Assembly: GCA_026770705.1 (NCBI GenBank)
Contig: JANJGN010000052.1
Coordinates: 1,488,001-1,552,000 of the forward strand
DNA length: 64,000 bases
Direction: 5' to 3'
Source of the DNA: Isurus oxyrinchus
Lineage: Eukaryota
Shown here: piece by piece, positions 1 through 54,705 of the stretch
Position numbering within the stretch: the first letter of the stretch is position 1
How the letters are laid out: every line of letters begins with the position of its first letter
The notes under the pieces: generated by a model
Database searches by the model: none
The model's input: the letters and a program-made list of their open reading frames with translations, nothing else
Told to the model about the DNA's origin: nothing
Position numbers and translations under genes: made by a program

Positions 1-1472
1 CAGAAGAGTGTGATAGAGAGAGATTGTGAGTGTTAGAGAGAGAATGTGTGTGTGTGAGAGAGAGAGAGATAGAGCAGAAGAGTGTGATAGAGAGAGATTG
101 TGAGTGTTAGAGAGAGAATGTGTGTGTGAGCGAGAGAGAGAGATAGAGCAGAAGAGTGCGATAGAGAGAGATTGTGAGTGTTAGAGAGAGAATGTGTGTG
201 TGTGTGAGAGAGATAGAGCAGAAGAGTGTGATAGAGAGAGATTGTGAGTGTTAGAGAGAGAATGTGTGTGTTTGTGAGAGAGAGAGAGAGATAGAGCAGA
301 AGAGTGTGATAGAGATTGTGAGTGTTAGAGAGAGAATGTGTGTGTGTGAGAGAGAGAGATAGAGCAGAAGAGTGCGATAGAGAGAGATTGTGTTTGTTAG
401 AGAGAGAATGTGTGTGTGTGTGAGAGAGAGATGCAGCAGAAGAGTGTGATAGAGAGAGATTGTGAGTGTTAGAGTGAGAATGTGTGTGTGTGAGAGAGAG
501 AGAGATAGAGCAGAAGAGTGTGATAGAGAGAGATTGTGAGTGTTAGAGAGAGAATGTGTGTGTGAGCGAGAGAGAGAGATAGAGCAGAAGAATGCGATAG
601 AGAGAGATTGTGAGTGTTAGAGAGAGAATGTGTGTGTGAAAGAGAGAGAGATAGAGCAGAAGAGTGTGATATAGAGAGATTGTGAGTGTTAGAGAGAAGA
701 TGTGTGTGTGTGTGAGAGAGATAGAGCAGAAGAGTGTGATAGAGAGAGATTGTGAGTGTTAGAGAGAGAATGTGTGTGTGAGAGAGAGATAGAGCAGAAG
801 AGTGTGATAGAGAGAGATTGTGAGTGTTAGAGAGAGAATGTGTGTGTGTGAGAGAGAGAGAGATAGAGCAGAAGAGTGTGATAGAGAGAGATTGTGAGTG
901 TTAGAGAGAGAATGTGTGTGTGAGCGAGAGAGAGAGATAGAGCAGAAGAGTGCGATAGAGAGAGATTGTGAGTGTTAGAGAGAGAATGTGTGTGTGTGTG
1001 AGAGAGATAGAGCAGAAGAGTGTGATAGAGAGAGATTGTGAGTGTTAGAGAGAGAATGTGTGTGTTTGTGAGAGAGAGAGAGAGATAGAGCAGAAGAGTG
1101 TGATAGAGATTGTGAGTGTTAGAGAGAGAATGTGTGTGTGTGAGAGAGAGAGATAGAGCAGAAGAGTGCGATAGAGAGAGATTGTGTTTGTTAGAGAGAG
1201 AATGTGTGTGTGTGTGAGAGAGAGATGCAGCAGAAGAGTGTGATAGAGAGAGATTGTGAGTGTTAGAGAGAGAATGTGTGTGTGTGTGAGAGAGAGATAG
1301 AGCAGAATAGTGCGATAGAGAGAGATTGTGAGTGTTAGAGAGAGTATGTGTGTGTGTGAGAGAGAGATAGAGCAGAAGAGTGTGATAGAGAGAGATTGTG
1401 AGTGTTAGAGAGAGAATGTGTGTGTGTGAGAGAGAGAGATAGAGCAGAAGAGTGTGATAGAGAGAGATTGTG
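1..1472. repeat. Minisatellite, ~62-68 bp unit (gatagagcagaagagtgtgatagagagagattgtgagtgttagagagagaatgtgtgtgtgtgagagaga), about 22 copies, runs off the window start
   Basis: Directly visible tandem repeat. The 827..1486 ORF is only its translation. Confidence 0.97.
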
Positions 1473-1742
1473 AGGGTTAAACACACTGAGAGAAAAAGCT
1501 GGACACCCAGCCCAGGGACTGAGGGACCAATGAATTTTTGTCATGTTTGGTGAATCGATTTGCGATGTCCATTCTGAATCTCTCCTTCCTTGTCTTGACA
1601 TTAGTTTATTCCCAGGAGCTGTTTAATTCCCTGAAATGTGACATTTAAACACAAGTTGTTGTTGTTTGAGGAAGAAACACTGGGGACAATTTCTGAAAAA
1701 GTCTCTGTCTTTATCATTTTCCATTTAGATGAGGAACTGAAG

Positions 1743-1788
1743 ATGGGAGAGGTCGGTCTGATATTGATCTTCATCAGCTTGCTGCAAG
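1743..1788 (+). CDS. Gene A signal-peptide exon MGEVGLILIFISLLQ
   Basis: Acceptor AG at 1727-1728, ATG at 1743, hydrophobic stretch, phase-1 donor CAAG|gtac. Splices in frame to VGLSQEWKG. Confidence 0.8.
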
Positions 1789-4700
1789 GTACAAATTCAT
1801 TACTGATCGGAACTCAGGGAATTGGATTCTTTCCTGGAGTGAGGAAGTGAGGATGTTTCAGAGATAGGGAAGGTTGTAGGGGGGGTTGTAGGAGCTGGAG
1901 GAGGTTACAGAGTTAGGGAGTGTTGCAGGGGCTGGAGGAGGTTACAGAGAGAGGGAGGGGAGTAGGATCTGGAGGAGGTTACAGAGATAGGGAGGGTTGT
2001 AGGGACTGAAGGAGGTTGCAGAGATATGGAGTGGAAAGGGGGTTGGAGGGATTGGGAATTGAGAATGAGAATCTTAAAATCGAGTCGTTGCTTGATTGGG
2101 AGCCGACAAAGGTCAGTGAGTGATGTGGGTGGTGGTTGGGTGGTTAAAGGTTGAGTAGAAGATCAGGAATAACAACTGGGGATGAAGTCTATCCCAATGT
2201 TAGATGTCTGATAGCGATATCCTGAAATGAGTGTCTTTTGCTGATTTTATTCAGAATTTCCCATGAAGACAACACAGCAGCTCCTAGAATAGACAGGCTG
2301 TTCAGTGTCACACTTCCTGTCCATTCTCACCATGCTAGATACTTCAATAAGGGAGCAAGTTAACTGAAAGAGAGAAGGAAGGTAAAGCTGTCCGTGTGTA
2401 AAGGTGTCAATATTCAGTTTGTATATTTGTCTTTCTCTCGACACATGCAGAACTCAGGCTAGAGGCGCTTTGTTAGTGTGTTTCACAGTGTCTGCTGGAG
2501 GAGGGTCAGTGCTGAGCTTGGGGACAAGTCAGTCTACAATGCTGCATCGGAATCAACAATACAACAATATGGTGTTTGGATCAGAAATAATCCCGTAGAC
2601 AATGAGGATCCAAAGAGATTCCTCAGACAATGAGGATCCAAAGAGATTCTTCAGACAATGAAGATACAAAGAGCACCAATCAGATTGAATCAGATTAGCC
2701 AATCAGCTGTGTTGAAGAGCAGACAGGAATGTTAGGCTAATTAGTGATTCATGACGGTGATAATGGGGGGAGTTCTGAGGGCTCCTAATCCATTGTCCTG
2801 TCTTGTAAATCAGCACTGAATGGATCTCAATTGGTGCGTCTTGTAGACAATGTGTTGGGTGGAAGACTGGCTTCACTAAACAGGGTCCTGAGGAACATGA
2901 GCCAATGTAGAATGAACTTGTCCACTCCTGTGTCCAGGATTCTCTTCCATCCATTGTGAAACCTTGGGGAGTTCCTTGTGTATCCTGTAGATGGTCCACA
3001 CTGCAGCCACTGTGCCCCAGTGATGGAGGGAGTGGATATCGAGTCTAGTGGATCTACAAACCATCCAGAGTTAAATATTGATATTTCTCTCCCCAGTTGG
3101 ACTGTCACAAGAGTGGAAAGGTGACACTCCACGAGAGATGACAGCGCAGGAAAGTTTGTGTGTACAGATTCCGTGTCATTACAGTTATCCATCAGAGTTG
3201 GAAAACCAACCGCGAGGTGGAGTCTGGTTTAATAATGAGAAACAGATTCCCTGGGCTCCCATTGCCTTTCACTCCAAGGATCACAGTCACGAGTTACCAC
3301 GGTTCCACCATCGGACCCGGCTGTCTGGAGACCTGAAAGATGGTGACTGTTCTCTGATTATAAACAACATCAGACGGGAAGATGCAGGACCTTATTTTTT
3401 CAGAATAGAATTTGACAATGGTCCGAGCCATAACTATTACCCTGTAACCCAGCTTCACGTTTCTGGTAAGTGCTGTGTTATAATTACTCAACAATTCACA
3501 TTCAACACTCAATGGGAAATAACACAAACTGTGACGTTTACATATTAACACAAAATACAGTTTATTATAACAGACTGTCTGATTCTCAATAACTGGGTGA
3601 TAGCTTCCAGTTCAGTCCTAAAGCAACCTCTAATACTCACTTTAATATCAATGATTAAATGTATTGACTGTGTCCATCAATGTTATCAGGTTATCCACTC
3701 CCATTAGTCTCTCTAATGCTTTTGAAATGTCTAACAATTTGACAAAAGAAGGATGTGCATTCCTATAGCGCCTTACAACACCTCAGCAAACTTCAAATCA
3801 TTTCATAGACAATGAAGAAATTCTTGAAGTATAGTCACTAACGTGGCAGTGAGTTTGTGCACAGGAAGCTCCCACAGAGGGCAATGGGATCAGTGACCCA
3901 GATCTCTGAGAGAATGATGAGCCAGGGTTCCATGAGCTGTGGGCTGCTCCATCACCCACACCCCAGTGTTGTCAATTCAAGGGTCTGGGAGTGAAAGTGT
4001 ATTCAGCTCAGTGACACATTCCCCACCAAGTTTGAAAATAGGTAAGTTGCTGCTGATTGTTGTTACCTCTCAGTTCCCATCTCATCCTTGGAAACCTGCT
4101 TTCAAAATACAAAAGCAAGTCTCACATTTCCATAGCGCCTTTCACCACCTCAGGACGATCCTAAATCAATTCACAGTCAATGAAGTGATTCTTGAAGCAC
4201 ACATTCTCCCCACTCTCTGGTTAAAGAAGTTTCTCCTGAATTCCCCATTGGATTTATTAGTGAGGATCTTATATTGTCAGCCTCTGGTTTTGTTCATTGT
4301 GAGGAATGGAAACACTCTCTCCATGTCTACTCGATCAAAACCTTTCACTACTTCAAAGATCAAATGAGGTCACCCCTCAACCTTCTCTGTTCAAGAGAAC
4401 AGAGACCCAGCCTGTTCAGCCTCTCCTGATAGGTAAAGCCTCACATTGCTGAGATCATCCTTGTGAAGCTTTTTACCACCCTCTCCAGTGTCTCCATATC
4501 CATTTCCAAATGCTGAGTCTGCTCTCCCCGAGCTGTGAGCTGTTCCTCCACCCTCACCCAGTCTGGTCAAATCAAGGGTCACTGAGTGAGAGTGTATTAA
4601 TCTGAGTGACAGAGATTCAACAAGTGTAAAAATAGACAATTCTTAAATGATCATTGTAACCTCTCAGTTCTGATATCATCCTTGTAAAAGTGCTTTCTCT

Positions 4701-7700
4701 TGTGGGACTGTGGTTTCTATTTGAACTGATGCTTCACGTTATATTTCTCTAAAAGGATCCATTCTCTGTGTGTTAGATTTCACAGATAAACCCACGATAT
4801 TCCCTGCTGAAATTATTGCAGGAAAGCGTGTGGATGTAAGCTGCACCTTCAACACAACGTGCAATGGAACAGCAGCACCTGTCTTAACCTGGGACACTCC
4901 CACTGACGTACCTGGATCAGTCTCAAACACTGTAACTCAGCATGGTGTCACTCTGACCTATACTTCTGTTCTGACCCTGATCCCATCACTCAAACACCAC
5001 GGACACACTCTCAGCTGCAGATTGAGATATCCATCTGTTTCATCGAAGCGGACCCTCGTAATGACTGTGCTATGTAAGTACAAACACCCTTCATTCTACA
5101 TTAGCTGGAATAGTATCAAATGTGCACAGCAAGCTCCCACATACTGCACTTTGTTTACCAACAAACCATTGGTGTTTCACTGGTAAAAAGTGACCCCTGA
5201 CAGGCAGTACATCCTTACTACTGACTCTCCGACAGTGCATCATGGACTCATAGACTCATAGACACATAGACAGAAGGAGGCCATTTAGCCCATCATGTCC
5301 ATGCTGGTCAGCAACTCCCTCCCCAAGTGCATCACCTCACACTTTTCCAGGTTGAATTCCATTTGCGTCGTGATCATTCCCCCTATATTTAATTCCAATT
5401 CATTTATATACACCACAAACAGCAAGTGCCCCAGCACTGAGCCCTGTGGAACCCCACTGGAAACAGACATCCAGTCACAGAAACATCCCTCCACCATCAC
5501 CCTCTTCTTCCTGCCTCAGCCAATATTGGATCCAACGTGCCACTTTGCCTTGGATCCCATGGGCTCTTACTTTCTTGGCCTCTCTGCCAAGAGGCACCTG
5601 ATCAAAAGCCTTCCTCAGCCCATGTCGACCACATCAAAGGCATTACTCTCATCAACACTCCTGGTTACCTCCTCAAAAGATTTGATCAGGTTTGTCAAAC
5701 ATGACCTTCCCTTAACAAATCCATGCTGAATATCCCAGATTAATCCTTGTCTCTCCCAGTGCAGATTCATTCTGTCCTTCAGAATTCTTACTAGTAACTT
5801 CCCCACCACCGAGGTTAGACTGACTGGCCTGTAATTTCCTGATCTATCCCTTCCTCCCTTTTTTAATAATGGGACAACATTAGCCATCCTCCAGTCCTCT
5901 GGCACCTCACCTGTGGCCAGAGAGGATTTGAAAATTACTGCCAGGGCCCCTGATATCTCTTCCCTTTCCTCCCTCAACAGCTTTGGATTCATCTCATCCA
6001 GGCTTGTGGATTTATCCACTTTTCAGGCCATTAAACCCACTAGTACCTCCTCTCTCTATGTTAATTTCCTCTCATATTTCACTGTCCTCCACCCTGATGT
6101 TATACCTGCATCATCCTTTTCCATTGTGAAGACTGATGCAAAGTATTCATTGAGGACTGTACCCACGTCTTCCAGGTCCACACACACATTACCTCGATGG
6201 TCCCTAATCAGCCCCACTCTTTCCCGAGTTATTCTGCTGCTCTTTACATATTTAAAAAAACCCTCTGGATTTTGCTTTATTCTACCCACCTGTGTTTTCT
6301 CATGCACTCTCTTATCTTTCCTAATGTCCTTTTTCAGTTCCCCTCTGCACTATTTATACTCCTCTAGGGACTCTGCTGTATTGAGCCCTCAGTATCTGCC
6401 ATAAGCTTCTCTTTTTTCTCAATCCTAACCTTTATGTTCCTTGTCTTCCAGGGTTCTCCAGACTTGGTCTCCCTCTTTGTCTTTACAGGAAGATATCTGC
6501 TCTGTACTCTCGCTATTCCCTCCTTGAATGCCTCCCACTGCTCTGATACAGTTTTATCTGCAAAGAGCTTCTCCCAGTCCACTTGGGCCCAATCATATCT
6601 CATCTTAGTAAAATTAGCCTTTCCCCAGTTTAGAATTTTTATTCCCAGCACAAACTTATCCTTCTCCATAACTGTCCTAAATCCAATTGAGTTACAGTCA
6701 CCATCTCCCCTACTGATACGCTTTCCACCTTCCCCGGCGCTTTTCCATATATTACGTCCAGAACTGTCCCCTCCCTTGTTGAGCTTTCTATGCACAGGCT
6801 AAAAATCTTCTCCTGGATGCAACTTCAGAATTTTTCTCCCTCCCTACCTTGCTCACTAAAGCTGTCCCAATTAATATTTGGGTAGTTAAAATCCCTGAGT
6901 ATTACTGCTTTATTATTCTTACACATCTCTGAAATGTGATCACATGTTGGATTGTCCATCTCTCCCTGACTGTTTGTTGGTTTTATATCTTGAGTCTATG
7001 AGTTCACTGGTTGATTAAACTCGAATTGCACTCCTTCATATACACTTGTTAGTTGATAAAAACAAAAAAAATCAACTCTTTTCTTCTCCCCCGATGCTGC
7101 CAGACCTGTTGAGTTATTCTTAGCTGATGCTCGCTATCAATAACCAAGAGAGACCAACATTAGAACAAGCTGATTATTTATTGTAACAGAGGGCAGAGCA
7201 CTAAATCCTTGCCTGCTCCCACCGCCACCTCCAGCTCTAGACTTACAGTTAACCAGTGGCCCACACTGTCCAGTGATTGGTCAGTACTGTCACATGGTTT
7301 ATCCACTTGTATTCTCTTAAAGGTACCTGGCACTCCACATTATCACAGGAGGCCTATAGTACACACATAACAGCGTGTTTGCCTCCTCAGCACTGACCCG
7401 TCTACAGTGCAGCATTTCCCTCATTACTGACTCTCTAACAGTGTAATGATCCCTCAGTAGTGCTCCTCCAACATTGCACTGGTCAATCAGAACTGACGCT
7501 CTGACTGTGCAGTTTTACCTCAGCAGTAACCCTCCTACAGTGCAGCGCTCCCACAGTACTGTCCCTCCTACAGTGCAGCACTCCCTCAGGACTGACCCTC
7601 CTACAGTGCAGCACTCCCTCAGAAGCGAACATTTGACAGTGCAGCACTACTTCAGTACTGACCCTCCAACAGTGCAGATCTCCCTCACTACTGACCCTCC

Positions 7701-10049
7701 GACAGTGCAGCACCCCCTCAGGACTGACCCTCTGACAGTGCAGCACGCCCTCAGTACTGACCCTCTGACAGTGCAGCACGCCCTCAATACTGAACTGAAG
7801 TGTCTGCCTGGATTACGGGCTATGTGGTGAAAGAGCTTACATTGACATCACACCTTTCACATTCTCAGTGTCTTTCAAAGTGCTTCACAGTCAGTGTAAG
7901 TTAACTGATCTGTATTTGTTTTTAGATGCTCCACGGAATCTCTCAATTACTTCTCCAGATATGATTAACGCTTCATCGATCAATATAATTGAGGGGAATT
8001 CTGCAGTGATAATCTGCTCTGTCGAGAGCTTCCCAGCTTCTAACCTGATGTGGCGACATCTTAATGTCCCAATGAACAGAACAAGTTCCAACAATGAGCT
8101 GTGGTTGGTGATTCCTCACGTTACATCCAGGGATACTGGAGAATATCAGTGTGTGGCAGAGAATGAACATGGAGCAGTGGAGGGGTTCCTAACCATTACT
8201 GTGGAACGTGAGTGTACACAGACTTTAATATTTCTCTCATCTCCGAACACATATACTCAGATGCTCTCCCACACACACACAAGCACTCACAAATGTACAG
8301 ACCCAAAGTGCATGCACACACACAATCCCACACTCATGAGCACACAGAAAGACACACTCACACACAAACACAGTAGTACACACTTCCCTGTGAGTTACCT
8401 GACCTCCCTCAGTACTGCACTGGAGAGTTCTCCTGGATTCTGGGATATGTGTTCCCATTCATATTTATCGAAGAATATCCAAATTACAAAGTCTATTCCA
8501 GAAACTCACATGCACAAAGATTCCAACAGATACTCCCCACCTCTCCGTGTATCTCTCTCCTCCTTTAAGAAGCTTCCTAATCCCTAACTCTTGCCTGTCC
8601 TAACTCCTCCTTATAATGCCCTGTGTCAAATATTTTGTGTATCTGAGAGAAAGGGAGAGATAAGGAAGTTTAGGAAGGGATTTCCTGTTAGTGAAGAGCT
8701 TACTTCTTTTTCTCACCTTTCCAGTGTTCAGTTTTGCCATCATGTCCAATGACCCTGTTTATAATGGGGGCCTCCTATGTAAACGTCACACTGTCTTTAC
8801 ATCCTCCCACCAGTGGTGGCACTGTGGTGCTTAACCTTGCACCTCCCAGCTTTTCAGCCAACGTCACTTCCCAATTTGCTACACATGCTGTAAGTTCATC
8901 AAAATTAACTTATATATCAAATGGTAGATGTGATAATTCATTTTATTGAAAGGTTCATCCGCGCTCTGGGAAAGGTTTGCACTCTCCAGGAAGCAGGAAT
9001 AGGCTGGATGTTGGGGAGTTCATCTTTTCCCAGAGAGTAGGGATCCTCGGGAATGTGCTGTCAGTGGGTGTGGTGGTTGCTGTCTCTCTGTTGCCTTCAA
9101 GAGGGATCTGGAGTGGTTACTGACTGGGGGAGAGATCATGGAAGCAGAGAATGATACAGCACAGGAGGAGGCCATTCAGCCCATTGTGCATGTGCCAGGT
9201 CTTTCAATGTTCTATCCAATCAGATCCACTAACCACCACTCCACTTTGCCCCCATCTTCTTCCTTCAAGTGTTTATCCAATTTCCCTTTTGAAAGTTCCT
9301 ATTGAATCTGCTTCCACCGCCCTTTCAGGCAGCACCTTCCAGATCACAACAACTCGCTCTGTCAAAACAAATTCTCCTCATCTCCCCCTCCAGTTCGTCA
9401 ATCTGTGTCCCTCTGGTTACCGACCCTCCTGCCCCTTAAATACATCGATCCTGTTCACCTCAACCACTCCCTGTGGGAGCGAGTTCCACATTCTCCCCTC
9501 TCTCTGGGTAAAGATTGGAACTGTTTATTAAGCGGGGGGTGTAAGTCCGTGGGGGAGTCCATCTCGATCCTGCCCGATTCGCACACGCGTCCGAGATGGA
9601 TTTCCACCCTGCACTAAACGTTTCCAGAATTTTCTACAGCACAATCCTGTACACAGCGATGGAGAGAAACATTGGACAGGGAGTCCAACAGCACAATGAT
9701 CCATTCTCACCAATGTTCCACGCTAAGGGGAAAGTTCCGATTGTCCACTCTTAGAGTGTTTACAATGAAAACATTCATTCCACATTGAATCCCAGTGGAT
9801 GGGTCAATATTACAGCAAATGTTGCAGTGATATGAAGCTTGATTGTTCAGCCAGAGTGAGAGATTGAAAGCAGAGAGTCAGTGATGATTTCTTTCTGTGT
9901 GTTCTCTAGACAGTGGAGGAGAGATTCTGCACGTGATCCTGATCCTGGGAATACGAGCTGTGATATTCCTTGTGGCTGTGGTTATCACTATCGCTGGAGT
10001 CTGTGTCTGGGAGAGACAAACAGTGAAAGGAAGTCGACAGACTGTTTGA
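1743..10049 (+). CDS. Gene A: Siglec-like receptor, activating type (leader, V-set, 2 C2-set, TM with Arg, short tail); exons 1743-1788, 3097-3465, 4777-5073, 7926-8207, 9910-10049; ~377 aa
   Basis: All introns are GT..AG and phase 1. Exon lengths sum to 1134 nt, open to TGA at 10047-10049. Siglec V-set hallmarks are present (CVQIPC, DCSL, YFFR). Confidence 0.88.
1850..2060. repeat. ~37-bp purine-rich tandem repeat (gagatagggagggttgtaggggctggaggaggttaca); inverse array at ~13690-14010
   Basis: Visible degenerate tandem copies. Confidence 0.75.
3097..3465 (+). CDS. Gene A V-set Ig exon (sialic-acid-binding domain)
   Basis: cccag|TTGGA acceptor, TCTG|gtaag donor. N-terminal Trp, CVQIPCHYSYP, GDCSL, GPYFFR with the essential Arg at 3402-3404, as in CD33/MAG/sialoadhesin V domains. 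Confidence 0.95.
4190..4505 (-). mobile_element. CR1-like LINE 3' fragment
   Basis: Similar to the CR1 3' ends at 10150-10770 and 57400-57910. Confidence 0.55.
4777..5073 (+). CDS. Gene A C2-set domain 2 exon
   Basis: ttag|ATTTC ... CTAT|gtaag, 297 nt. SCTFNTTCNG..PVLTW carries the extra Cys used for the V-C2 interdomain disulfide in Siglecs. Confidence 0.93.
5245..6978 (-). mobile_element. Degenerate CR1 LINE ORF2 (reverse transcriptase region)
   Basis: Minus ORFs contain WRMANVVPLLKKG..GNYRPVSLTSVVGKLL, QHGFVKGRSCLTNL and SGVPQGSVLG. Confidence 0.92.
6980..7347 (-). mobile_element. Solo LTR of the Gypsy-like element found at 18503-20488
   Basis: Matches both LTRs of the gene B element and sits at the same position inside the shared CR1. 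Confidence 0.75.
7385..7795. repeat. 33-bp minisatellite (cagtgcagcactccctcagtactgaccctccga)
   Basis: Tandem copies; they produce the spurious TVQHSLSTDPP ORFs. Confidence 0.92.
7926..8207 (+). CDS. Gene A membrane-proximal C2/I-set exon
   Basis: ttttag|ATGCT ... GAAC|gtgag, 282 nt. IICSVESFP..W..DTGEYQCVAEN.HG. Confidence 0.93.
9910..10049 (+). CDS. Gene A terminal TM exon HSGGEILHVILILGIRAVIFLVAVVITIAGVCVWERQTVKGSRQTV*
   Basis: Pyrimidine tract plus ctctag acceptor (9908-9909). The phase-1 reading gives a hydrophobic helix with Arg (CGA 9954-9956) and a stop at 10047. Absent from the ORF track, which shows a different frame. Confidence 0.85.
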
Positions 10050-10149
10050 AGCTTTGTACAGCAACAATCTGGTCAGTCAGTGCGGACAAATAACGTGTGA
10101 TGTTGTGTTAAGTTGTAAAGAAACTGGTCAGTGTCCTGGTTAGAATCAC

Positions 10150-10770
10150 CTTCGTATCAGAGAGGCATTCCAGCACAGTGGGAGCCCATTCAGCCCATTG
10201 AGTCTATGCTGTCTCTCTGTAGAGCAATCCAGTCAGTCCCATTCCCCCGCTTTATCCCCGTATCCCTGTGAGTTTATTTCTAAGTGTCCGTCCAATTTCC
10301 TTTTGAAATCATTCATCGTCTCCGCTTCCACCATCCTCGTAGGCAGCGAATTCCAGCTCATTACCACTCGCTGTGTAAAAAAGTTCCTCCTCACATCCCC
10401 CCCCGCCCAAAACCTTCAATCTGTGTCCCCCAGTCCTTGTCCCATCAGCTAATGGCAACAGCTTCTCTTCGTCTACCTGATCTAAACCCATCATCATCTT
10501 GTACACCTCGATCAGATCCCCCCTCAATCTCCTTTGCTCCAAGGAGAACAACCCCAGCTTCTCCAGCCCAACCTTGTAGCTAAAATCCCTCATCCCTGGA
10601 CCCCTTCTGCTCAATCTCCTCCCCACCCTCTCAAGGACCCTCACTTCCTTCCCAAAGTGAGGAGACCAGAACTGGACACAATACTCTAGTTGTGACCTAA
10701 CCAGAGCTTTATAAATGTTCAGCATAACCTCCCTGTGTTTGTTCTCAATCCCTCGATTTATGAAAAGCTT
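10150..10770 (-). mobile_element. CR1 LINE 3' end
   Basis: ORF with YKALVRSQLEYCVQFWSPH and GLFSLEQRRLRGDLIEVYK. Confidence 0.92.
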
Positions 10771-11121
10771 ATTCTTTCCATCAGCACAAACAGCAATTTC
10801 CAAGCTGACTCCCATCAGCAGACAGAGTGCAATGAAACATCGGCATGCCTGCTTCTTAATGTACGGAGAGAAACCTGGAACGAGAGATTCTCCTTCTTCT
10901 CCTCAGCAAGCTGAAACTTTTCCTTATACCTGGTGCTCCCCAGTCCTGCTGTGTGGACACATCATAACCACGGCATTGTCTGGCTGTGTGCAGCCAACAT
11001 GGACGAATAGGAATGAACAGAAATGTGACGTTGCTAAACTCTGTTCTCTGATTGGAATGTGCTTTCTGAATGCTGCACCTTTTTCATGCTGCGATAGATT
11101 GTAAGAAGCATTTGGGTTATG

Positions 11122-11127
11122 AATAAA
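11122..11127 (+). terminator. Candidate polyadenylation signal for gene A
   Basis: AATAAA inside a 3' block shared with genes B and C. Confidence 0.4.
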
Positions 11128-11469
11128 ATTACATTGATTAACTCAAGTGATTAAAATGCTCAGCCTGTTCTGTAGATACTTATGGATTAAAATTCTTATT
11201 TTGCTGCCAGATTCTTGGCTCAAAGACATTACTTCATGTTGTCACTTTTTCCAGTCAGATGAATTCCTGTGCCCATCTTTATAATGGAAATTTTCAATGT
11301 AAACACGTCACATTGCAGCTGCACACAATTGCCAGTGGGTGGTGTGATATCAAAGCTGCCTTGCTGCTCAGAAAAAGAGAGAAATATTCCTGATAAATGC
11401 ATGAACTTCATGTGTGCATCAGACACTGACATCAGATGCAATTTTGTGCAATTTGTGCAATGTATTTTA

Positions 11470-12005
11470 GACAGTGCAGCACTCCCTCAGTTCAGACCCT
11501 CCAACAGTGCAGCACTCCCTCAGTTTAGACCCTCCAGCAGTGCAGCACTCCCTCAGTTCAGGCCCTCCGACAGTGCAGCACTGCGTTAGTTTAGACCCTC
11601 CTACAGTGCAGCAATCCCTCAGTTTATACCTTTCAACAGTGCAGCACTCCCTCAGTTCAGACCCTCCAACAGTGCAGCACTCTCTCAGTTTAGACCCTCC
11701 AACAGTGCAGCACTACCTCAGTTCTGACCGGCCGACAGTGCAGCACTCCCTCAGTTCAGACCCTCCAACACTGCAGCACTCCCTCAGTTCTGACCGGCCG
11801 ACAGTGCAGCACTCCCTCAGTGCCAACACTCTGACAGTGCAGAACTCCCTCAGAGCTGTCCCTCAAACAGAGCAGCACTCCCTCGCTGCTTATCCTCCAT
11901 CAGTGCAGCACACCTCAATACTGACGCGCCAACAGTGCAGCACTCCCTCAGTACTGACCCTCTGACAGGGTAGCACTCCAACAATACTGACCCTCTGACA
12001 GTGCA
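11470..12005. repeat. 33-bp minisatellite array
   Basis: Same unit as 7385-7795. Confidence 0.92.
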
Positions 12006-12179
12006 GAACATGCTTATTATTTATCCTCCAACAGCATTTTTAAATATAAACCCTCAGAGCCATGGTAGAAATTTGAAGTTAACAAACAGCAAACAGAAAG
12101 ATCACAGAGTCATGATGAATTGCCAACAGTTTGATTCTGTTGTAACGCATTGTGAAATTACTCACTCACTCCTACTGCC

Positions 12180-49895: not shown

Positions 49896-52800
49896 CACAC
49901 ACACACGTGTAGGCACACACATGCACACTTATACACACACAGTCATACACGTGCAAACACATACAGAGGAATATATATACACAACTCACACACACACACA
50001 CATTCATGCCCACACATAGACACACACATGCACATTCACTCACTCTTGGACAGACGTAGACACACAGTCATGCGTGCATGCGCACACACAGATACATGTG
50101 TGCATACACACACAAGCACACTCACTTCTGCAGAAACACAAACACACACACACTCACACACATACACAAATGTGAGTTCCCTCTCCTCTCTCAGGGTGCA
50201 CTGGAGTCTCGGTATCAGCTCTGATTCTGTGTTGAAGGAAGGTAAACTCCAGATCAACAAGACCCTGAATTGGATGAGCAACCTCCTGAACAGAGAATGG
50301 TAGATTTACCCCTCAGTGCTCCATCAATCAAACATTGCCTGTCAAGCCCTTGGCGAAATCCTGAGGATATGAAAGCAAGCTTCTTTCATTCTAGATGGAC
50401 AACACCTCTACTGGTGGGAGAATGCAATTGCAGTGTGACAGTTTACATAGGCAGTGTCCATTAAAAATGTGGCATTAGACCTTATCCTGAGGGAAGTTAC
50501 CTGGAAATGCATTCAGACATCAGATACAGAGACATGATGCATGGAGTCTTGCTGTGCACTATGTTTGCTCACGTTAAAATCTTTATATGTTTTTAGATGC
50601 ACCATGGAATCTCTCAGTCAATTCTCTTGATATGATTAACGCTTCATGGATCAATACAATTGAGGGGAATTCTGCAGTGATAATCTGCTCTGTCGAGAGC
50701 TTCCCAGCTTCTAACCTGATGTGGCGACATCTTAATGTCCCAATGAACAGAACCAGTTCCAACAATGAGCTGTGGTTGGTGATTCCTCACGTTACATCCA
50801 GGGACACTGGAGACTATCAGTGTGTGGCAGAGAATGAACATGGAGCAGTGGAGGAGTTCATAACCATCACTGTGGAACGTGAGTTACANNNNNNNNNNNN
50901 NNNNNNNNNNNNNNNNNNNNNNNNNNNNNNNNNNNNNNNNNNNNNNNNNNNNNNNNNNNNNNNNNNNNNNNNNNNNNNNNNNNNNNNNNNNNNNNNNNNN
51001 NNNNNNNNNNNNNNNNNNNNNNNNNNNNNNNNNNNNNNNNNNNNNNNNNNNNNNAATCCCACATGTGCACAGGTGTGTACACCTGCATGCTCACACACAC
51101 AGAAGGAAACATACACAGAATCACACGTGTGCTTGCTCAGACACACACAGACATGTGTGAGTAGTCTGTTCTTGCTGTGCTGCACTGGAGTGTTGCTCCA
51201 GATTCTGCTCTGAAACACTGACGACATCAGCTGAACAAGACCCTGTATTGGACGAGCAGCCCCCTGCACAGAGAATTGTAGGTTTATCACTCAATACCCC
51301 ATTATTCTAAAGCAATTCCTCCACTGTCAAATCCCTGTGAACATCCTGATGATGTGAAAGACATTTTCTTTTCTTCTAGCCCGACAGTGTCTCCTCTGGT
51401 GGAAGGCTGTAATTACAGCGTGACAGTTTACATATCCACATGCAGCAAGAGCTGAACAACACTCAGCTTGGCTGAGAAATGACAATTAATGTTCATGCCA
51501 CACAAGTACCAGGGAGAGCTGTTCCTTGTGTTGACCCTTGGGATTGTTTATCCCAACCTGATAGGGCAGAGGGGGCCCAGGTTGTGACTATCAGTGTGTG
51601 GCAGAGAATGAACATGGAGCAGTGGAGGGGTCCATAACCATCACTGTGGAATGTGAGTGTGGAGAAATATTTGTTTGTTTGTTGTCTCCGTGGTCTCCGT
51701 GGAGCCATTGGGATCGTGTTGTTTTTAATCCAGTTTTCTTCAATCCTCGCTCAGTCCACGTTATCCACACATCCAATTTTTCCTCTCCCTTTCTGTTTTT
51801 GCTCTCAGTTTCTCCTTCAATGGTTGTGAGGACAAGGCTGTCAGGTCTTCGTTTCCAATCTCCGTACTTGACGACCTTTCTCTCTCTAACTGTCCTGAAC
51901 AACCCTTTTAATTGCTGAACTTCTCATTCTTTAATTGATAAATATTATATATAAATGTTACATGGATTACTTTGAAATGCAACACTTGTATTCATAAATT
52001 GCTTAGAAATGACTAAACATTCAACAGCCAATGAAGCATTATCGAAGTAAGCTAACTGTTGTAAAGGAGGAAACACAGGTACTGATGTGTACACAGCAAG
52101 ATCCCACAAACCACCGTGTCTTAATGACCTGATAGGCGATTATTTCAATGAGGTTGGTTTTTTAATGTGTAGAGAGACTACATACCCTTTAGGGAGGGAA
52201 GCATGTCTCGATGTGGATGTGACTCCAGTCTCAGACACCATCATGGTTAAATCACATCTGCCCTCTGAACTGCTCTCCCAGTTTGGGACAAACCAGTGGT
52301 TCAGGAGGAAGACCCCCCACCACCTTCTCAAGGGGAAACTAGGGATGGACAATAAATGTCAGCATTGCCGAGAATGAATATTTAAACACTGAGTGAGTGT
52401 ATCGCTTCTCGAGATACATCGGAGCATCATTGTAAACCTGTAGTGCAGTAATTAATGGCTGTTTTTACAGGTAGAGACTCCAGTAAATGGACAGTAGGAT
52501 TGTTCACGGCTGGGATCATGTTGAGTGTTTTCCTGGCTGGAATCTTCATCTTCATCTGTGTGAGAAAGTAAGTCTGAAGATTTAACTTGATTTTAATATA
52601 AACATTTGCTTCAATGTTCTTTCCTGAAGTCGGTGATTGTTTCCCTTGTGTTAAGCGCCAGATGCCTCTCCCTAACTGGTCTCTTTATCCGTTATGATCC
52701 AGACAGAGTTTTTCATTGCCCGTTATCCAGATGAATAATAATCAGTTGCTGTGATCTGGAAGGTGCTGCCTGAAAGGGCGCTGGAAGCAGATTCAATAGG

Positions 52801-54705
52801 AACTTTCAAAAGGGGAATTGGATAAATACTTGAAGGGGGAACATTTGAAGGGCTATGGGGGGAAGAGCAGGGGTGGAGGGGGGGTCAAAGATATGGCGTG
52901 TCATTATAATGATATTATACCTTGGGCTTATTTACTGTATAAGACAGAAAACACCAATCACTCATAGGGGATTTGGTGAGATTGTTAATGATTTGTTTAT
53001 CAAGACTCGGCACGAGAACAGTTATACATACGGAGAAAGCTTGAAGGTATCAGAGCTGTGTGTGTGTGCTCTGCTCAAAGCAAATGTCAAACTGAGATTG
53101 GATCACATGACACACTTCCATTATAGTGATGTCACGCTGATACCCCTTATTGGAACAAGAGACAGTCCAGTCATTGGTGTAAGGTTACAGTGGGCTCTGT
53201 GTCTGTGCTGCACTGACTCTTTGCTATATGATAACCACAGTGTGATATTGTGTTATTGCAGGAGAAAGACAGCGATGGAGGAGAGAGGTTCAGGGACCAA
53301 TTACATTGCATTGACCCCCAGGTCACTCTCTGTGAAGCACCAGGTACAGGAGCTGTTTACACTCACTCCAAAGCTTCAACCTCAGTCTGTAGACAACACG
53401 TATACCAGATTCTCAACCGGGTTACACACAGATATCTCCCTGTGAAGTCAGCAATGGCTCAGTGGTCAGCACTGTCTCTCGCTCCCTGCCTCTGTCTCCC
53501 TCCATCACTCGCTCTTTGACCAGAAACCTGAACACAATAATGACAAGGCACCTGATGTCAGCAGTGAGGGAGTGCTGCACTGTCAGAGGGTCAGTACTGA
53601 GGGAGTGCTGCACTGTCGGAGTGTCAGTACTGAGAGGGTGCTGCACTGTCGGAGGGTAAGTTGCACTGTCAGAGGATCAGTACAGATGGAGTGCTGCACT
53701 GTCGGAGGGTCAGTACTGAGGGAGTGTTGCACTGTCAGAGTGTCAGTACTGAGGGAGTGCTGCACTGTCAGAGGGTCAGTACTGAGGGAGTGCTGCACTG
53801 TCAGAGGGTCAGTACTGAGGGAGTGCTGGACTGTCGGTGGGTCAGTACTGAGGGAGTGCTGCACTGTCTGATGGTCAGTACTGATGGTGTGCTGGACGTT
53901 CGGAGTATCAGTACTGAGGCAGTGCAGCACTGTCAGAGGGTCAGTACTGAGGGAGTGCTGCACTGTCAGAGGGTCAGTACTGAGGGAGTGCTGCACTGTC
54001 AGAGGGTCAGTACTGAGGGAGTACTGCACTGTCGGAGGGTCAGTAGTGAGGGAGTGCTGCACTGTCAGAGGGTCAGTATTAAGGGAGTGCTGCACTGTCA
54101 GAGGATCAGTACTGAGGGAGTACTGCACTGTCGGAGGGTCAGTATTGAGGGAGTGCTGCACTGTCAGAGGGACAGTATTGAGGGAGTGCTGCATTGTCAG
54201 AGGGTCAGTATTGAGGGAGTGCTGCACTGTCAGAGGGTCAGTATTGAGGGAGTGCTGCACTGTTGGAGTGTGATAGAGATTAAATTATAAAGAGAGAGAG
54301 AGAAAGCGAGAGAGAAAGAGAGACAGAGAAAGAGAGTGAAAAAAAAGGCTTAAACCCACTGAGACACGACTGACAGTAACGAGGCTGCACAATAATTTAA
54401 CCCTATCAGTGCCAGTAAATGATGTGAGGATGTCTTCTGTTTCTATTTCTCTGTAGGATGAACAGAACTTGCTGATTTCTGAGCCCCAGGAAACAACCAG
54501 AGACACAAACAGTGAGGGGGAGACCCCAGCTCCCCGGGATCTCTCTGAAGGTCCAGTGGGAGGCGATGTTGGACATGGGAACCCCGACAAACCAGACGAG
54601 CTTTTCTACGCCAACATCAACTTTTCAAAGCTGCCCGGCGGTGACAGGACTGTGCACAGGAGCGAGGACACGGAATACGCACAGATCAGGTTCCAGAAAA
54701 ACTGA
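36131..54705 (+). CDS. Gene C: long inhibitory Siglec-like receptor (leader, V, C2, 31-aa stub, 9 tandem C2, TM, ITIM tail); ~1253 aa if all exons are used
   Basis: 16 exons with GT..AG and compatible phases, summing to 3762 nt. Tail has TNYIAL, LFYANI and TEYAQI. Confidence 0.87.
39602..39967 (+). CDS. Gene C V-set exon
   Basis: 366 nt, open. CVQIPC, GVWF, DCSL, YFFR (Arg at 39904-39906), SYSY. Confidence 0.95.
40826..41122 (+). CDS. Gene C C2 domain-2 exon
   Basis: 297 nt, AG/GT intact. Confidence 0.93.
41342..41434 (+). CDS. Internally deleted C2 mini-exon (APQNLSFTSLDMINASSINIIEGFITITVE)
   Basis: 93 nt, equal to the 282-nt unit minus 189 nt. Splice sites and frame retained. Confidence 0.6.
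42129..42410 (+). CDS. Gene C tandem C2 repeat exon R1
   Basis: 282 nt, phase 1-1, AG/GT intact. Confidence 0.9.
43092..43373 (+). CDS. Gene C tandem C2 repeat exon R2
   Basis: 282 nt, phase 1-1. Confidence 0.9.
44122..44403 (+). CDS. Gene C tandem C2 repeat exon R3
   Basis: 282 nt, phase 1-1. Confidence 0.9.
45115..45396 (+). CDS. Gene C tandem C2 repeat exon R4 (same peptide as R2)
   Basis: 282 nt, phase 1-1. Confidence 0.87.
46145..46426 (+). CDS. Gene C tandem C2 repeat exon R5 (same peptide as R3)
   Basis: 282 nt, phase 1-1. Confidence 0.87.
47196..47477 (+). CDS. Gene C tandem C2 repeat exon R6
   Basis: 282 nt, phase 1-1. The acceptor is preceded by a (TA)n run, so it may be weaker. 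Confidence 0.85.
48274..48555 (+). CDS. Gene C tandem C2 repeat exon R7
   Basis: 282 nt, phase 1-1. Confidence 0.9.
49536..49817 (+). CDS. Gene C tandem C2 repeat exon R8
   Basis: 282 nt, phase 1-1. Confidence 0.9.
50597..50878 (+). CDS. Gene C tandem C2 repeat exon R9
   Basis: 282 nt, phase 1-1; followed by the N gap 50889-51054. Confidence 0.9.
51581..51652 (+). pseudogene. 3' remnant of a further C2 repeat exon (DYQCVAENEHGAVEGSITITVE)
   Basis: Matches the last quarter of the repeat exon with its donor; the 5' part is deleted. Confidence 0.75.
52471..52567 (+). CDS. Gene C TM exon RDSSKWTVGLFTAGIMLSVFLAGIFIFICVRK
   Basis: tttacag| ... |gtaagt, 97 nt, uncharged hydrophobic helix. Not in the ORF track. 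Confidence 0.9.
53262..53343 (+). CDS. Gene C cytoplasmic exon A (RKTAMEERGSGTNYIALTPRSLSVKHQ)
   Basis: 82 nt, phase 2 to 0; Tyr motif TNYIAL at 53296-53313. Confidence 0.88.
53565..54270. repeat. 33-bp minisatellite, about 20 copies
   Basis: Tandem array; source of several spurious ORFs. Confidence 0.93.
54457..54705 (+). CDS. Gene C terminal exon with ITIM (LFYANI) and distal ITIM-like/ITSM motif (TEYAQI)
   Basis: 249 nt to TGA. Motifs at 54601-54618 and 54670-54687, arranged like the CD33-type proximal ITIM plus distal TEY motif. Confidence 0.92.
   Translation, partial: DEQNLLISEPQETTRDTNSEGETPAPRDLSEGPVGGDVGHGNPDKPDELFYANINFSKLPGGDRTVHRSEDTEYAQIRFQKN

What the first reader, a model, noticed from the sequence alone, without database searches (positions are those of the whole stretch)
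1743..54705. Paired activating/inhibitory Siglec-like receptor cluster in a probable cartilaginous fish
Seen: gene A (TM Arg, Tyr-free short tail) and gene C (neutral TM, ITIM plus two more Tyr motifs) have nearly identical V and C2 ectodomains, both with the essential YFFR arginine. Known: paired Siglecs (human Siglec-5/14 and 11/16) are kept alike by gene conversion and are thought to counter pathogens that mimic sialic acid. The non-mammalian repertoire is usually described as Siglec-1, CD22, MAG and Siglec-15. Inference: this is a paired-Siglec system, either independently evolved or very ancient, that automated annotation would probably label only as MAG-like or sialoadhesin-like.
Basis: partly seen in the sequence, partly recalled or inferred. 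Interest (0 to 1): 0.92.

Follow-up and report, generated by a model that had tools for sequence, protein, structure and literature searches.

The report
Shark Siglec-type activating/inhibitory gene cluster
This stretch of shark DNA holds three neighbouring Siglec-type immune-receptor genes (one 'activating', one apparently broken, one 'inhibitory') whose outer parts are kept alike except for the two loops that normally choose the sugar ligand, in an animal group whose Siglec repertoire I found no paper about.

Summary
Three head-to-tail Siglec-type genes lie on the + strand.

- **Gene A (1743-10049):** leader, V, two C2 exons, then a transmembrane exon with a buried Arg and a 14-residue Tyr-free tail.
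TGG>TGA stop in its V exon and three tandem tail cassettes.
- **Gene C (36131-54705):** neutral transmembrane segment, ITIM (LFYANI), TEYAQI and a third Tyr, plus nine intact 282-nt tandem C2 exons.

All N gaps lie in introns or between genes.

Siglec membership holds by sequence and fold: PDB sequence hits, Foldseek ranks 1-47, the YFFR arginine and the Siglec cysteine pattern.

RNA-like contigs show the Arg exon spliced at 9910, but to a C2a-type exon end that differs from gene A's own. The 8207>9910 joint was not seen.

"Nearly identical ectodomains" is half right. C2a is homogenised (dS 0.02). The V framework differs by 4%. However, 27 of 41 V differences fall in the C-C' loop and F-G/G patch, and those loop types recur in other sharks and rays. 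A and C are therefore not a matched Siglec-5/14-type pair.

NCBI already names the relatives CD33-like or Siglec-n. The scan found this family before on other DNA of this genome.

The parts
1743..1788 (+). Gene A leader exon (MGEVGLILIFISLLQ, phase 1, donor GTACAA)
3097..3465 (+). Gene A V-set exon, intact; YFFR Arg; C-C' loop type 'EKQIPWAP', G patch 'DNGPSHNYY'
4777..5073 (+). Gene A C2a exon (CD80-like C2-set; three Cys aligned with Siglec domain 2)
7926..8207 (+). Gene A C2b exon (282 nt, phase 1-1, Ig_3/I-set)
9910..10049 (+). Gene A transmembrane exon with buried Arg (LGIRAV) and 14-residue Tyr-free tail, stop 10047-10049
13427..13466 (+). Gene B leader exon (MIGKSYFLLSLLQ)
14562..14927 (+). 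Gene B V exon with TGG>TGA stop at 14690-14692 in place of the conserved C-strand Trp; extra Cys (PSCLENQ)
15460..15600 (+). Partial duplicate of the 5' part of a C2a exon (gene B intron)
16301..16597 (+). Gene B C2a exon
20842..21123 (+). Gene B C2b exon; donor intact, N gap starts 8 nt later
21636..21732 (+). Gene B TM exon (as gene C's but with Glu in the hydrophobic segment)
21841..30351 (+). Three tandem ~3-kb units. Each holds a SINE-like repeat, a cyt1 exon (22454-22535, 25385-25466, 28464-28545) and a cyt2 exon (23972-24220, 27033-27281, 29916-30164). The tails lack the ITIM and keep TEYAQI.
36131..36170 (+). Gene C leader exon (MIGKSYFLLSLLQ)
39602..39967 (+). Gene C V-set exon, intact; YFFR Arg; C-C' loop 'EEWRTSS', G patch 'DSRNSYSYY'
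40826..41122 (+). Gene C C2a exon
41341..41434 (+). Internally deleted C2b copy (about 31 codons, frame kept)
42129..50878 (+). Nine intact 282-nt C2b exons in tandem, starting at 42129, 43092, 44122, 45115, 46145, 47196, 48274, 49536 and 50597. All have a polypyrimidine-AG acceptor and a GTGAGT donor.
51586..51652 (+). 3' fragment of a C2b exon without acceptor
52471..52567 (+). Gene C TM exon, uncharged, phase 1 in / phase 2 out
53262..53343 (+). Gene C cytoplasmic exon 1 (TNYIAL)
54457..54705 (+). Gene C cytoplasmic exon 2 (ITIM LFYANI, TEYAQI, stop)
21132..21539 (.). N gap, in the intron after gene B's C2b exon
30352..30547 (.). N gap, intergenic (after gene B's last tail cassette)
50889..51054 (.). 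N gap, in the intron after gene C's ninth C2b exon

Best explanation
The window holds one local cluster of a large, elasmobranch-wide family of Siglec-type immunoreceptor genes. The family is built from interchangeable exon modules.

- **Gene A** encodes V-C2a(-C2b), followed by a membrane anchor with a buried arginine and no signalling tail. I infer that it signals through a separate ITAM adaptor (DAP12- or FcR-gamma-like) and activates the cell.
- **Gene C** encodes the same kind of ectodomain, lengthened by up to nine repeated C2 domains. It ends in an ITIM/ITSM tail that I infer recruits SHP-type phosphatases and inhibits.
- **Gene B** is a C-type gene with an ITIM-less tail variant. In this assembly a stop codon in its V exon inactivates it.

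The V domains have every sequence and fold hallmark of sialic-acid-binding Siglecs, so sialylated glycans are the likeliest ligands (inferred). Gene conversion keeps the C2a exon and the V framework alike between the genes. The two loops that set glycan specificity in known Siglecs escape this homogenisation and persist as old, trans-species cassettes. A and C therefore probably read different ligands. The locus is better described as a modular multigene family (binding cassette x stalk length x signalling tail) than as one matched pair.
For: **Architecture and splice phases.** Shown. All Ig exons are phase 1-1, and the TM>cyt1>cyt2 phases fit. NCBI models from other sharks use the same joins: P0004 and P0019 for TM-cyt1-cyt2, and P0006, P0021 and P0167 for Ig>Arg-TM.

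**Siglec identity.**
- Pfam V-set plus Ig_CD22.
- In phmmer against PDB, the 17-18 best distinct sequences are all Siglecs, at 3e-15 to 5e-12. The first non-Siglec hit is at 2e-9 and covers only part of the domain.
- The AlphaFold model has pLDDT 91.7, and Foldseek ranks 1-47 are all Siglec V domains with TM 0.80-0.89.
- The CxxxxC and E-strand Cys, and the three Cys of C2a, align with Siglec-5, MAG and CD33.

**Activating cassette.**
- It is conserved at about 80% in Scyliorhinus torazame (two genes), Chiloscyllium punctatum and one further protein.
- In four RNA-like runs the TM exon is 10-50 times deeper than the flanking intron. Contigs end at, or are spliced at, the predicted acceptor.

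**Conversion versus cassettes.**
- C2a has dS 0.02 while the V exon has dS 0.25. The C2a exon shows 8/298 differences against 80/389 in its flanks, P about 1e-13.
- 27 of 41 V differences fall in 47 nt, binomial P about 4e-15. The remaining 4.3% equals the flanking intron.
- The V framework of A and C is 96/102 identical, closer than to any other species. Gene A's loops match Carcharodon 10/11, Pristiophorus 9/11 and Cetorhinus 9/9, but match gene C only 5/13 and 4/9.

**Repeated C2b exons.** They are 96% identical against 84% for the upstream intron, with dN/dS about 0.55. Long multi-C2 relatives exist in Stegostoma and Mobula.
Against: - No binding, adaptor or phosphatase data exist for any of these proteins.
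- The RNA contigs that join the Arg exon carry a C2a end that differs from gene A's own at several bases. It is one base from gene B's and gene C's C2a. They therefore come from a paralogue or allele, and gene A's own transcript is not shown.
- The 8207>9910 joint was not listed.
- The runs are only guessed to be RNA.
- The V tree is unresolved inside the shark clade. The loop-cassette argument therefore rests on loop identities, not on a supported phylogeny.
- Gene B's stop is a single base and could be an allele or a sequencing error.
- The copy number of C2b exons is uncertain, because there are two intronic gaps and two pairs of exons are 100% identical.
Confidence: 0.75

Rival explanations
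1. Strict paired receptors. Under this reading A and C see the same sialylated ligand, and gene conversion keeps them matched so that the activating member counters pathogens that exploit the inhibitory one (the Siglec-5/14 model).
For: - The two genes are adjacent and carry opposite signalling modules.
- The C2a exon and the V framework are homogenised.
- The essential Arg is kept in both.
Against: - The C-C' loop and the F-G/G patch are unrelated between A and C (5/13 and 4/9 identical). In known Siglecs these are the specificity determinants.
- Each of these loops matches loops in other species instead.
- Gene A's loop type occurs on ITSM-tailed receptors in Carcharodon (P0156). A truer partner for A may therefore lie elsewhere in the genome.
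Confidence: 0.2
2. These are Siglec-fold receptors that no longer bind sialic acid, or never did. They would instead recognise protein or other ligands, and the Arg would be kept for structural reasons.
For: - Binding is untested.
- The V domain is about equally distant from CD33-related Siglecs and from MAG.
- Some mammalian Siglecs have lost the Arg or bind non-sialylated ligands (my own knowledge).
Against: - The Arg is nearly invariant across 20 aligned shark, ray and teleost relatives.
- The Siglec cysteine pattern is kept.
- The top 47 structural neighbours are all sialic-acid-binding V domains.
Confidence: 0.15
3. Gene A is an untranscribed or decaying copy. The activating reading would then apply only to paralogues elsewhere in the genome.
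For: - The spliced contigs carry a C2a end that is not gene A's.
- Gene A's leader differs from the family's usual MIGKSYF leader.
- Neighbouring gene B is already broken.
Against: - All five gene A exons are open, with good splice sites.
- In run X15 the TM exon matches the window at the positions that differ in the other organism's runs (table 3).
Confidence: 0.15
4. Assembly artefact. A, B and C, or the C2b array, would be mis-joined haplotypes or collapsed and expanded repeats.
For: - The assembly has N gaps inside the array.
- Two pairs of C2b exons are 100% identical.
Against: - A, B and C differ by 3-14% in their exons and by up to 25% or more in their introns, and they have different exon sets and tails.
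- The 2-kb higher-order repeat is 96% identical, not 100%.
- Multi-C2 relatives exist in other species.
Confidence: 0.03

Closest known systems
Human Siglec-5 / Siglec-14 (and Siglec-11/16) paired receptors
   Same: - A Siglec V domain with the essential Arg.
- An inhibitory ITIM plus ITIM-like tail in one gene.
- A basic transmembrane residue with a short tail in a neighbouring gene.
- Gene-conversion signal between the ectodomain exons.
   Different: - In the human pairs the ligand-binding domains are almost identical. Here the two specificity loops differ completely.
- The Arg-TM cassette gave no match in a search of solved-structure (PDB) sequences.
- The family has many members rather than one pair.
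- An origin separate from the primate pairs is likely but was not tested.
CD33-related Siglecs of mammals
   Same: - The best PDB sequence hits for gene A's V domain are Siglec-5, -8, -7 and CD33.
- V plus C2 architecture.
- The tail is split over two exons, with an LxYxxI ITIM and a distal TEYxxI motif.
- Rapid, clustered evolution.
   Different: - MAG scores about equally well.
- No tree or synteny links these genes to the mammalian cluster.
- Gene C carries up to nine tandem copies of one C2 exon.
- The held teleost literature states that fish lack this subgroup (PMC7226832). That paper does not mention sharks or cartilaginous fish.
Sialoadhesin (Siglec-1) and CD22
   Same: Long ectodomains made of many C2-set domains behind a Siglec V domain.
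   Different: - Here the length comes from recent tandem amplification of a single exon, with copies 94-100% identical.
- V similarity to CD22 is weak (E 1e-5 to 9e-4).
- Sialoadhesin has no ITIM tail (my own knowledge).
Other paired immunoreceptor families (KIR, LILR, PILR, SIRP; teleost NITR/LITR)
   Same: - Clustered genes with shared ectodomains.
- Either ITIM tails or a charged transmembrane residue for adaptor coupling.
- Birth-and-death evolution with pseudogenes.
   Different: Different V-domain family. PILR scores only E 4e-6 to 1e-3 against these V domains.

Membership tests
Siglec (I-type lectin) family | N-terminal V-set domain with the conserved sialic-acid-binding Arg on strand F | tested here: met
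   - YFFR is present in A, B and C.
- The Arg aligns with that of Siglec-5.
- It lies on predicted strand 97-105 of the model.
- It is nearly invariant in 20 relatives.
Siglec (I-type lectin) family | Siglec cysteine pattern: CxxxxC in strand B, a Cys in strand E, and an extra Cys in domain 2 for the interdomain bond | tested here: met
   - The V cysteines align with those of Siglec-5.
- The three C2a cysteines align with those of MAG and CD33 domain 2.
- The bonds themselves are inferred.
Siglec (I-type lectin) family | V domain closer to Siglec V domains than to other V-set families | tested here: met
   - In the phmmer search of PDB, all top distinct hits are Siglecs.
- Foldseek ranks 1-47 are all Siglecs, and the first other family appears at rank 48.
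- The protein atlas's nearest named clusters are CD22-like, SIG10 and CD33-like.
Siglec (I-type lectin) family | Binds sialic acid in an Arg-dependent way | not testable with these tools
   This needs V-Fc proteins on sialoside arrays, with Arg>Ala controls.
CD33-related Siglec subgroup | Cytoplasmic ITIM plus membrane-distal ITIM-like/ITSM motif | tested here: met
   - Gene C has LFYANI and TEYAQI.
- Gene B's tail copies keep only TEYAQI.
CD33-related Siglec subgroup | Groups with mammalian CD33-related Siglecs rather than with MAG, CD22, Siglec-1 or Siglec-15 | tested here: inconclusive
   - PDB E-values: CD33-related Siglecs 3e-15 to 5e-12, MAG 4e-15 to 4e-13, sialoadhesin 3e-13 to 4e-10, Siglec-15 8e-9 to 2e-6, CD22 1e-5 to 9e-4.
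- No reference Siglec sequences could be brought into a tree.
CD33-related Siglec subgroup | Lies in the syntenic CD33-related Siglec cluster | not testable with these tools
   - The window holds only the three Siglec-type genes and repeats.
Paired activating/inhibitory Siglecs (Siglec-5/14 type) | Activating member with a basic transmembrane residue and a short tail without Tyr, next to an ITIM member | tested here: met
   Gene A against gene C.
Paired activating/inhibitory Siglecs (Siglec-5/14 type) | Ligand-binding domains kept near-identical between the two members | tested here: not met
   - The framework is 96/102 identical.
- The C-C' loop is 5/13 identical and the G patch 4/9.
- 27 of 41 nucleotide differences fall in these 47 nt.
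Paired activating/inhibitory Siglecs (Siglec-5/14 type) | Activating member associates with an ITAM adaptor (DAP12 or FcR-gamma) | not testable with these tools
   No adaptor sequence from this species was in hand. Earlier scan notes mention an FcR-gamma-like gene elsewhere in the genome, which I did not check.
Paired activating/inhibitory Siglecs (Siglec-5/14 type) | Both members are expressed as spliced mRNAs | tested here: inconclusive
   - The Arg-TM exon is enriched and spliced at 9910 in RNA-like contigs. Its upstream partner is a paralogue- or allele-type C2a end.

The most novel reading that the evidence does not exclude
Elasmobranchs run a CD33-type, fast-evolving Siglec system of their own. 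A small set of ancient binding-loop cassettes is combined with activating, inhibitory and other tails. Some cassettes are shared by galeomorph and squalomorph sharks, and one also by a ray. Selection would preserve them against continual gene-conversion homogenisation of the rest of the ectodomain. That would place the sialic-acid self/non-self arms race, and the paired-receptor answer to it, at or near the base of jawed vertebrates, or show a striking convergence with primates.
Probability: 0.3. Interest if true: 0.75.

Novelty: new member of a known kind. Interest (0 to 1): 0.55.

Why it matters
- **Gap in the literature.** Textbook and teleost-based accounts give fish only Siglec-1, CD22, MAG and Siglec-15, and state that fish lack CD33-related Siglecs (PMC7226832). 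Shark and ray genomes clearly hold many CD33-like Siglec genes with activating and inhibitory versions. These exist so far only as automatic gene models. I found no paper on them in the held library.
- **A testable pattern.** The mosaic seen here, with the framework homogenised and the specificity loops kept as trans-species cassettes, suggests how a lectin receptor family can keep several ligand specificities while swapping signalling outputs.
- **Limits.** Each component is of a known kind: Siglecs, paired receptors, gene conversion and exon amplification. Function is entirely inferred.

Tried and rejected
- **Leader scans.** The first leader-exon scans missed the leaders of genes B and C because the hydrophobicity filter was too strict. 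A motif scan found them.
- **Shared block upstream of B and C.** The 500-nt block at 12179-12676 and 35538-36015 looked like a promoter or leader, but it is a SINE-like repeat.
- **Membrane-proximal Ig domain.** The 'CVCVANSNPPG' Ig domain seen in relatives is absent from the window.
- **Searches with the Arg-TM segment.** Searching it within P0006 found only one further protein, because of the length window of the search. Searching it against PDB and NCBIfam found nothing.
- **V-domain tree.** It supports a shark clade (98/95), but its inner branches are unresolved. It could not decide between orthology and concerted evolution.
- **Haplotype misassembly.** Rejected on divergence and structure.
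- **Reference tree.** No tree with reference mammalian Siglecs was made, because no tool supplied those sequences as usable ids.
- **Rest of the window.** Pfam scans of other ORFs found only LINE reverse-transcriptase fragments.
Full report
**What is in the sequence**

The window is vertebrate DNA, rich in repeats, with eight N gaps.
- three V exons, at about 3.1, 14.6 and 39.6 kb;
- three full C2a exons plus one fragment;
- thirteen C2b-type copies.

Reading the frames and splice sites gives three head-to-tail genes.

Gene A has five exons:
- leader 1743-1788;
- V 3097-3465;
- C2a 4777-5073;
- C2b 7926-8207;
- last exon 9910-10049. It encodes a hydrophobic segment with a single Arg (..LGIRAV..) and a 14-residue tail without Tyr.

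- leader 13427-13466;
- V 14562-14927;
- C2a 16301-16597;
- C2b 20842-21123;
- TM 21636-21732;
- three tandem ~3-kb units, each carrying the two cytoplasmic exons.

Gene C has:
- leader 36131-36170;
- V 39602-39967;
- C2a 40826-41122;
- an internally deleted C2b copy;
- nine intact C2b exons between 42129 and 50878;
- a 3' C2b fragment;
- TM 52471-52567;
- cyt1 53262-53343;
- cyt2 54457-54705.

All Ig exons are phase 1-1. The TM exon of B and C ends in phase 2, and cyt1 begins with the matching single base. NCBI gene models from other sharks use the same joins: P0004 and P0019 for TM>cyt1>cyt2, and P0006, P0021 and P0167 for Ig>Arg-TM.

**Gaps**

None of the three gaps in the finding interrupts an exon.
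- 21132-21539 starts 8 nt after the donor of gene B's C2b exon.
- 50889-51054 starts 10 nt after the donor of gene C's ninth C2b exon.
- 30352-30547 lies behind gene B's last stop.

The two intronic gaps may hide further C2b units, so the exon count is a minimum.

**Check of the observation**

The activating signature of gene A is present as described: Arg in the membrane segment and a short Tyr-free tail. So is the inhibitory signature of gene C: an uncharged membrane segment, TNYIAL, the canonical ITIM LFYANI, and TEYAQI. Both V exons carry YFFR.

'Nearly identical ectodomains' needs qualification. Between A and C:
- C2a exons are 97.3% identical in DNA;
- C2b exons are 94-96.5% identical;
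- V exons are 89.6% identical in DNA and 88% in protein.

Gene B has TGA in place of the conserved C-strand Trp codon (TGG in A and C) at 14690-14692. It also has a Glu in its membrane segment. Its three tail copies have lost the ITIM (FLYANP, LLYANT) but keep TEYAQI. A Carcharodon model (P0019) has the same tail variant, so the variant itself is probably functional. Gene B as assembled is most simply a pseudogene, or a null allele.

**Host**

Every close relative of the V exon comes from sharks or rays. The 1.8-billion-protein HMMER scan gave 36 hits below 1e-30. The best identities are 82% to Carcharodon carcharias and 79% to Cetorhinus maximus and Mustelus asterias. Further relatives occur in:
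- sharks: Scyliorhinus, Chiloscyllium, Hemiscyllium, Stegostoma, Rhincodon and Pristiophorus;
- rays: Pristis, Hemitrygon, Hypanus, Rhinoraja, Mobula and Narcine.

Teleost relatives (Scleropages, Arapaima, Clarias) are 35-44% identical. The window is therefore from an elasmobranch, probably a shark close to the lamniforms. The run names were coded, so the species itself was not identified.

**Siglec membership**
- Pfam finds V-set plus the CD22-type first Ig domain.
- In phmmer against all PDB sequences, the top 17-18 distinct hits for both V exons are Siglecs: Siglec-5, -8, -7, CD33, MAG, Siglec-10 and sialoadhesin, at 3e-15 to 4e-10. The first other family, pIgR, scores 2e-9 or weaker over only part of the domain.
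- In those alignments the Arg of YFFR, the CxxxxC pair and the E-strand Cys coincide with those of Siglec-5.
- The three cysteines of C2a align with those of MAG and CD33 domain 2, including the extra one that makes the interdomain bond in Siglecs.
- An AlphaFold model of gene A's V domain has pLDDT 91.7. Searched against the PDB, it returns only Siglec V domains at ranks 1-47 (TM 0.80-0.89), and the first other fold is at rank 48.

Sialic-acid binding itself cannot be tested here. Assignment to a subgroup is open. CD33-related Siglecs and MAG score about equally, Siglec-15 and CD22 much worse, and the tail layout is CD33-like.

**Expression**

I laid 7830-10600 on the contigs of four runs flagged as possible RNA.
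- Depth is exon-shaped. In X17-X19 the Arg exon bins hold 120-234, against 0-7 in the intron before them. In X15 they hold about 6,800-12,000 against about 970.
- Contigs of X18 and X19 end exactly at the predicted acceptor.
- Contigs of X15 and X17 continue upstream of 9908 into 27 and 56 letters that are the end of a C2a-type exon. This shows a C2a>Arg-TM splice, phase 1, at acceptor 9910.
- That C2a end differs by one base from gene B's and from gene C's C2a, and by several bases from gene A's. These contigs therefore come from a paralogue or another allele.
- An S. torazame model (P0167) has the same C2a>TM join.
Contigs cannot prove absence.

The cassette is thus shown to be transcribed and spliced. 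Gene A's own mRNA is not shown.

**How alike are A and C, and why**

The C2a exon has dS 0.02 between A and C, while its flanking introns are 17-25% diverged and the V exon has dS 0.25. The exon shows 8/298 differences against 80/389 in the flanks, P about 1e-13. Purifying selection cannot remove synonymous differences to that degree, so this indicates exon-centred gene conversion.

Around the V exon, a 750-nt tract (2884-3633) is only about 4.4% diverged in exon and intron alike. Identity falls sharply outside it.

Inside the V exon, 27 of the 41 differences lie in two patches totalling 47 nt (binomial P about 4e-15):
- 3240-3263, which is the C-C' loop (residues 48-55 of the model);
- 3418-3440, which is the F-G turn and the start of strand G.

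In solved Siglecs the ligand sits on the G-F-C-C' face, and the C-C' loop sets glycan specificity (my own knowledge of the Siglec-7 and sialoadhesin structures).

The loops are not random divergence.
- Gene A's C-C' loop matches Carcharodon 10/11, Pristiophorus 9/11 and Pristis 7/11.
- Gene A's G patch matches Cetorhinus 9/9 and S. torazame 8/9.
- Gene C's G patch matches Cetorhinus V1 and Stegostoma 7/9.
- Against each other, A and C match only 5/13 and 4/9.
- The frameworks of A and C (96/102) are closer to each other than to any other species.
- All three genes in the window have different C-C' loops.

The picture is a homogenised framework with old, trans-species loop cassettes. The V tree alone could not confirm this. 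The shark clade is supported at 98/95, but it is unresolved inside.

**Gene C's exon array**

The nine C2b exons are each exactly 282 nt, open, and have good acceptors and GTGAGT donors. They are 96% identical on average, against 84% for the 200 nt upstream of them, and dN/dS is about 0.55. This suggests they are used. Two exon pairs are 100% identical, but they belong to a 2-kb higher-order repeat that is 96% identical overall, so this is a real recent duplication rather than a duplicated assembly block. Long V-C2a-(C2b)n relatives are predicted in Stegostoma (1,463 aa, named 'hemicentin-1-like') and Mobula.

**Most likely mechanism**

Shown:
- the exon modules;
- the Siglec-type V domain;
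- the two opposite tail types;
- the conservation and transcription of the Arg cassette;
- the conversion and cassette mosaic.

Inferred:
- sialoglycan ligands;
- coupling of gene A to an ITAM adaptor through the buried Arg;
- phosphatase recruitment by gene C's ITIM/ITSM;
- different ligand preference of A and C;
- a variable stalk length in gene C.

The locus behaves as one node of a modular multigene family, not as a single matched pair.

**Comparison with what is known**

The closest known system is the primate Siglec-5/14 and 11/16 pairs, together with the CD33-related Siglecs in general. The defining feature of a matched pair, near-identical binding domains, was tested and is not met for A and C. 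I therefore file the cluster under 'Siglec family, with activating and inhibitory members', not under 'Siglec-5/14-type pair'.

The held literature on fish Siglecs is teleost-based. It states that fish lack CD33-related Siglecs (PMC7226832). I found no paper on shark or ray Siglecs. NCBI's pipeline already names the relatives CD33-like or Siglec-8/10/11/12/13/14, so the genes are not hidden from annotation.

**Earlier notes of this scan**

Other windows of the same genome carry the same family. Some lie 0.9-1.4 Mb from this one on the same piece. Follow-up agents have already described a large family with activating and inhibitory versions and the Arg-TM cassette. I used these notes as leads only. 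The points I rely on were re-derived here.

**Verdict**

This is a real, well-defined Siglec-type cluster with an activating-type gene, an apparently broken gene and an inhibitory gene. The 'pair kept alike' reading is only half right. The novelty is that of a new, undescribed lineage of a known kind of receptor system, and all function is still inferred.

Noticed in passing
window 1-1479: A 74-nt satellite (about 20 copies, 90% matches, strong GC skew) lies directly upstream of gene A's leader exon.
   Followed up: partly
window 7385-7793, 11471-12006, 20260-20697, 23592-23826, 26678-26912, 29571-29769, 53662-54263, 61579-61865: A 33-nt minisatellite recurs in both orientations in introns and between genes of the cluster. 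It produces long spurious ORFs ('PTVQHSLSTD' repeats).
   Followed up: partly
window 4704-7056 and 16229-18580: The C2a exon and the following intron, which holds a LINE reverse-transcriptase fragment on the minus strand, are 97.5% identical between genes A and B. That is far more than their V regions (91%). It points to a recent conversion or duplication tract of about 2.3 kb.
   Followed up: partly
window 21841-30351: Three tandem ~3-kb copies of [SINE-like repeat + cyt1 exon + cyt2 exon] lie behind gene B. All six exons are open. They could be alternative 3' ends or leftovers of unequal crossing-over.
   Followed up: partly
window 14562-14927 (gene B V exon): Gene B's V domain carries an extra Cys (PSCLENQ) where A has Glu and C has His. 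Multi-V gene models of other sharks have the same Cys in their second or third V domain. An earlier scan note links this Cys to stacked V domains.
   Followed up: no
window 21636-21732: Gene B's transmembrane exon has Glu where gene C has Gly (GGA>GAA), giving an acidic residue in the membrane segment of an otherwise inhibitory-type gene.
   Followed up: no
relatives P0014 (Pristis pectinata); P0007, P0011, P0025, P0027, P0041: Some ray and shark relatives end in other tails. One has a canonical ITAM (YQEL-x7-YSEL), which may be a merged gene model. Several have paired YxN motifs. The family therefore has more than two signalling outputs.
   Followed up: no
window 9132-9596 and 10198-10452: A repeat inside gene A's last intron and downstream of its stop has very high depth and many odd joints in all four runs. 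It is probably a transcribed or high-copy interspersed element and is unrelated to the gene.
   Followed up: no
window 12179-12676 and 35538-36015: A SINE-like element, 90% identical between the two copies, sits upstream of the leader exons of both gene B and gene C.
   Followed up: partly
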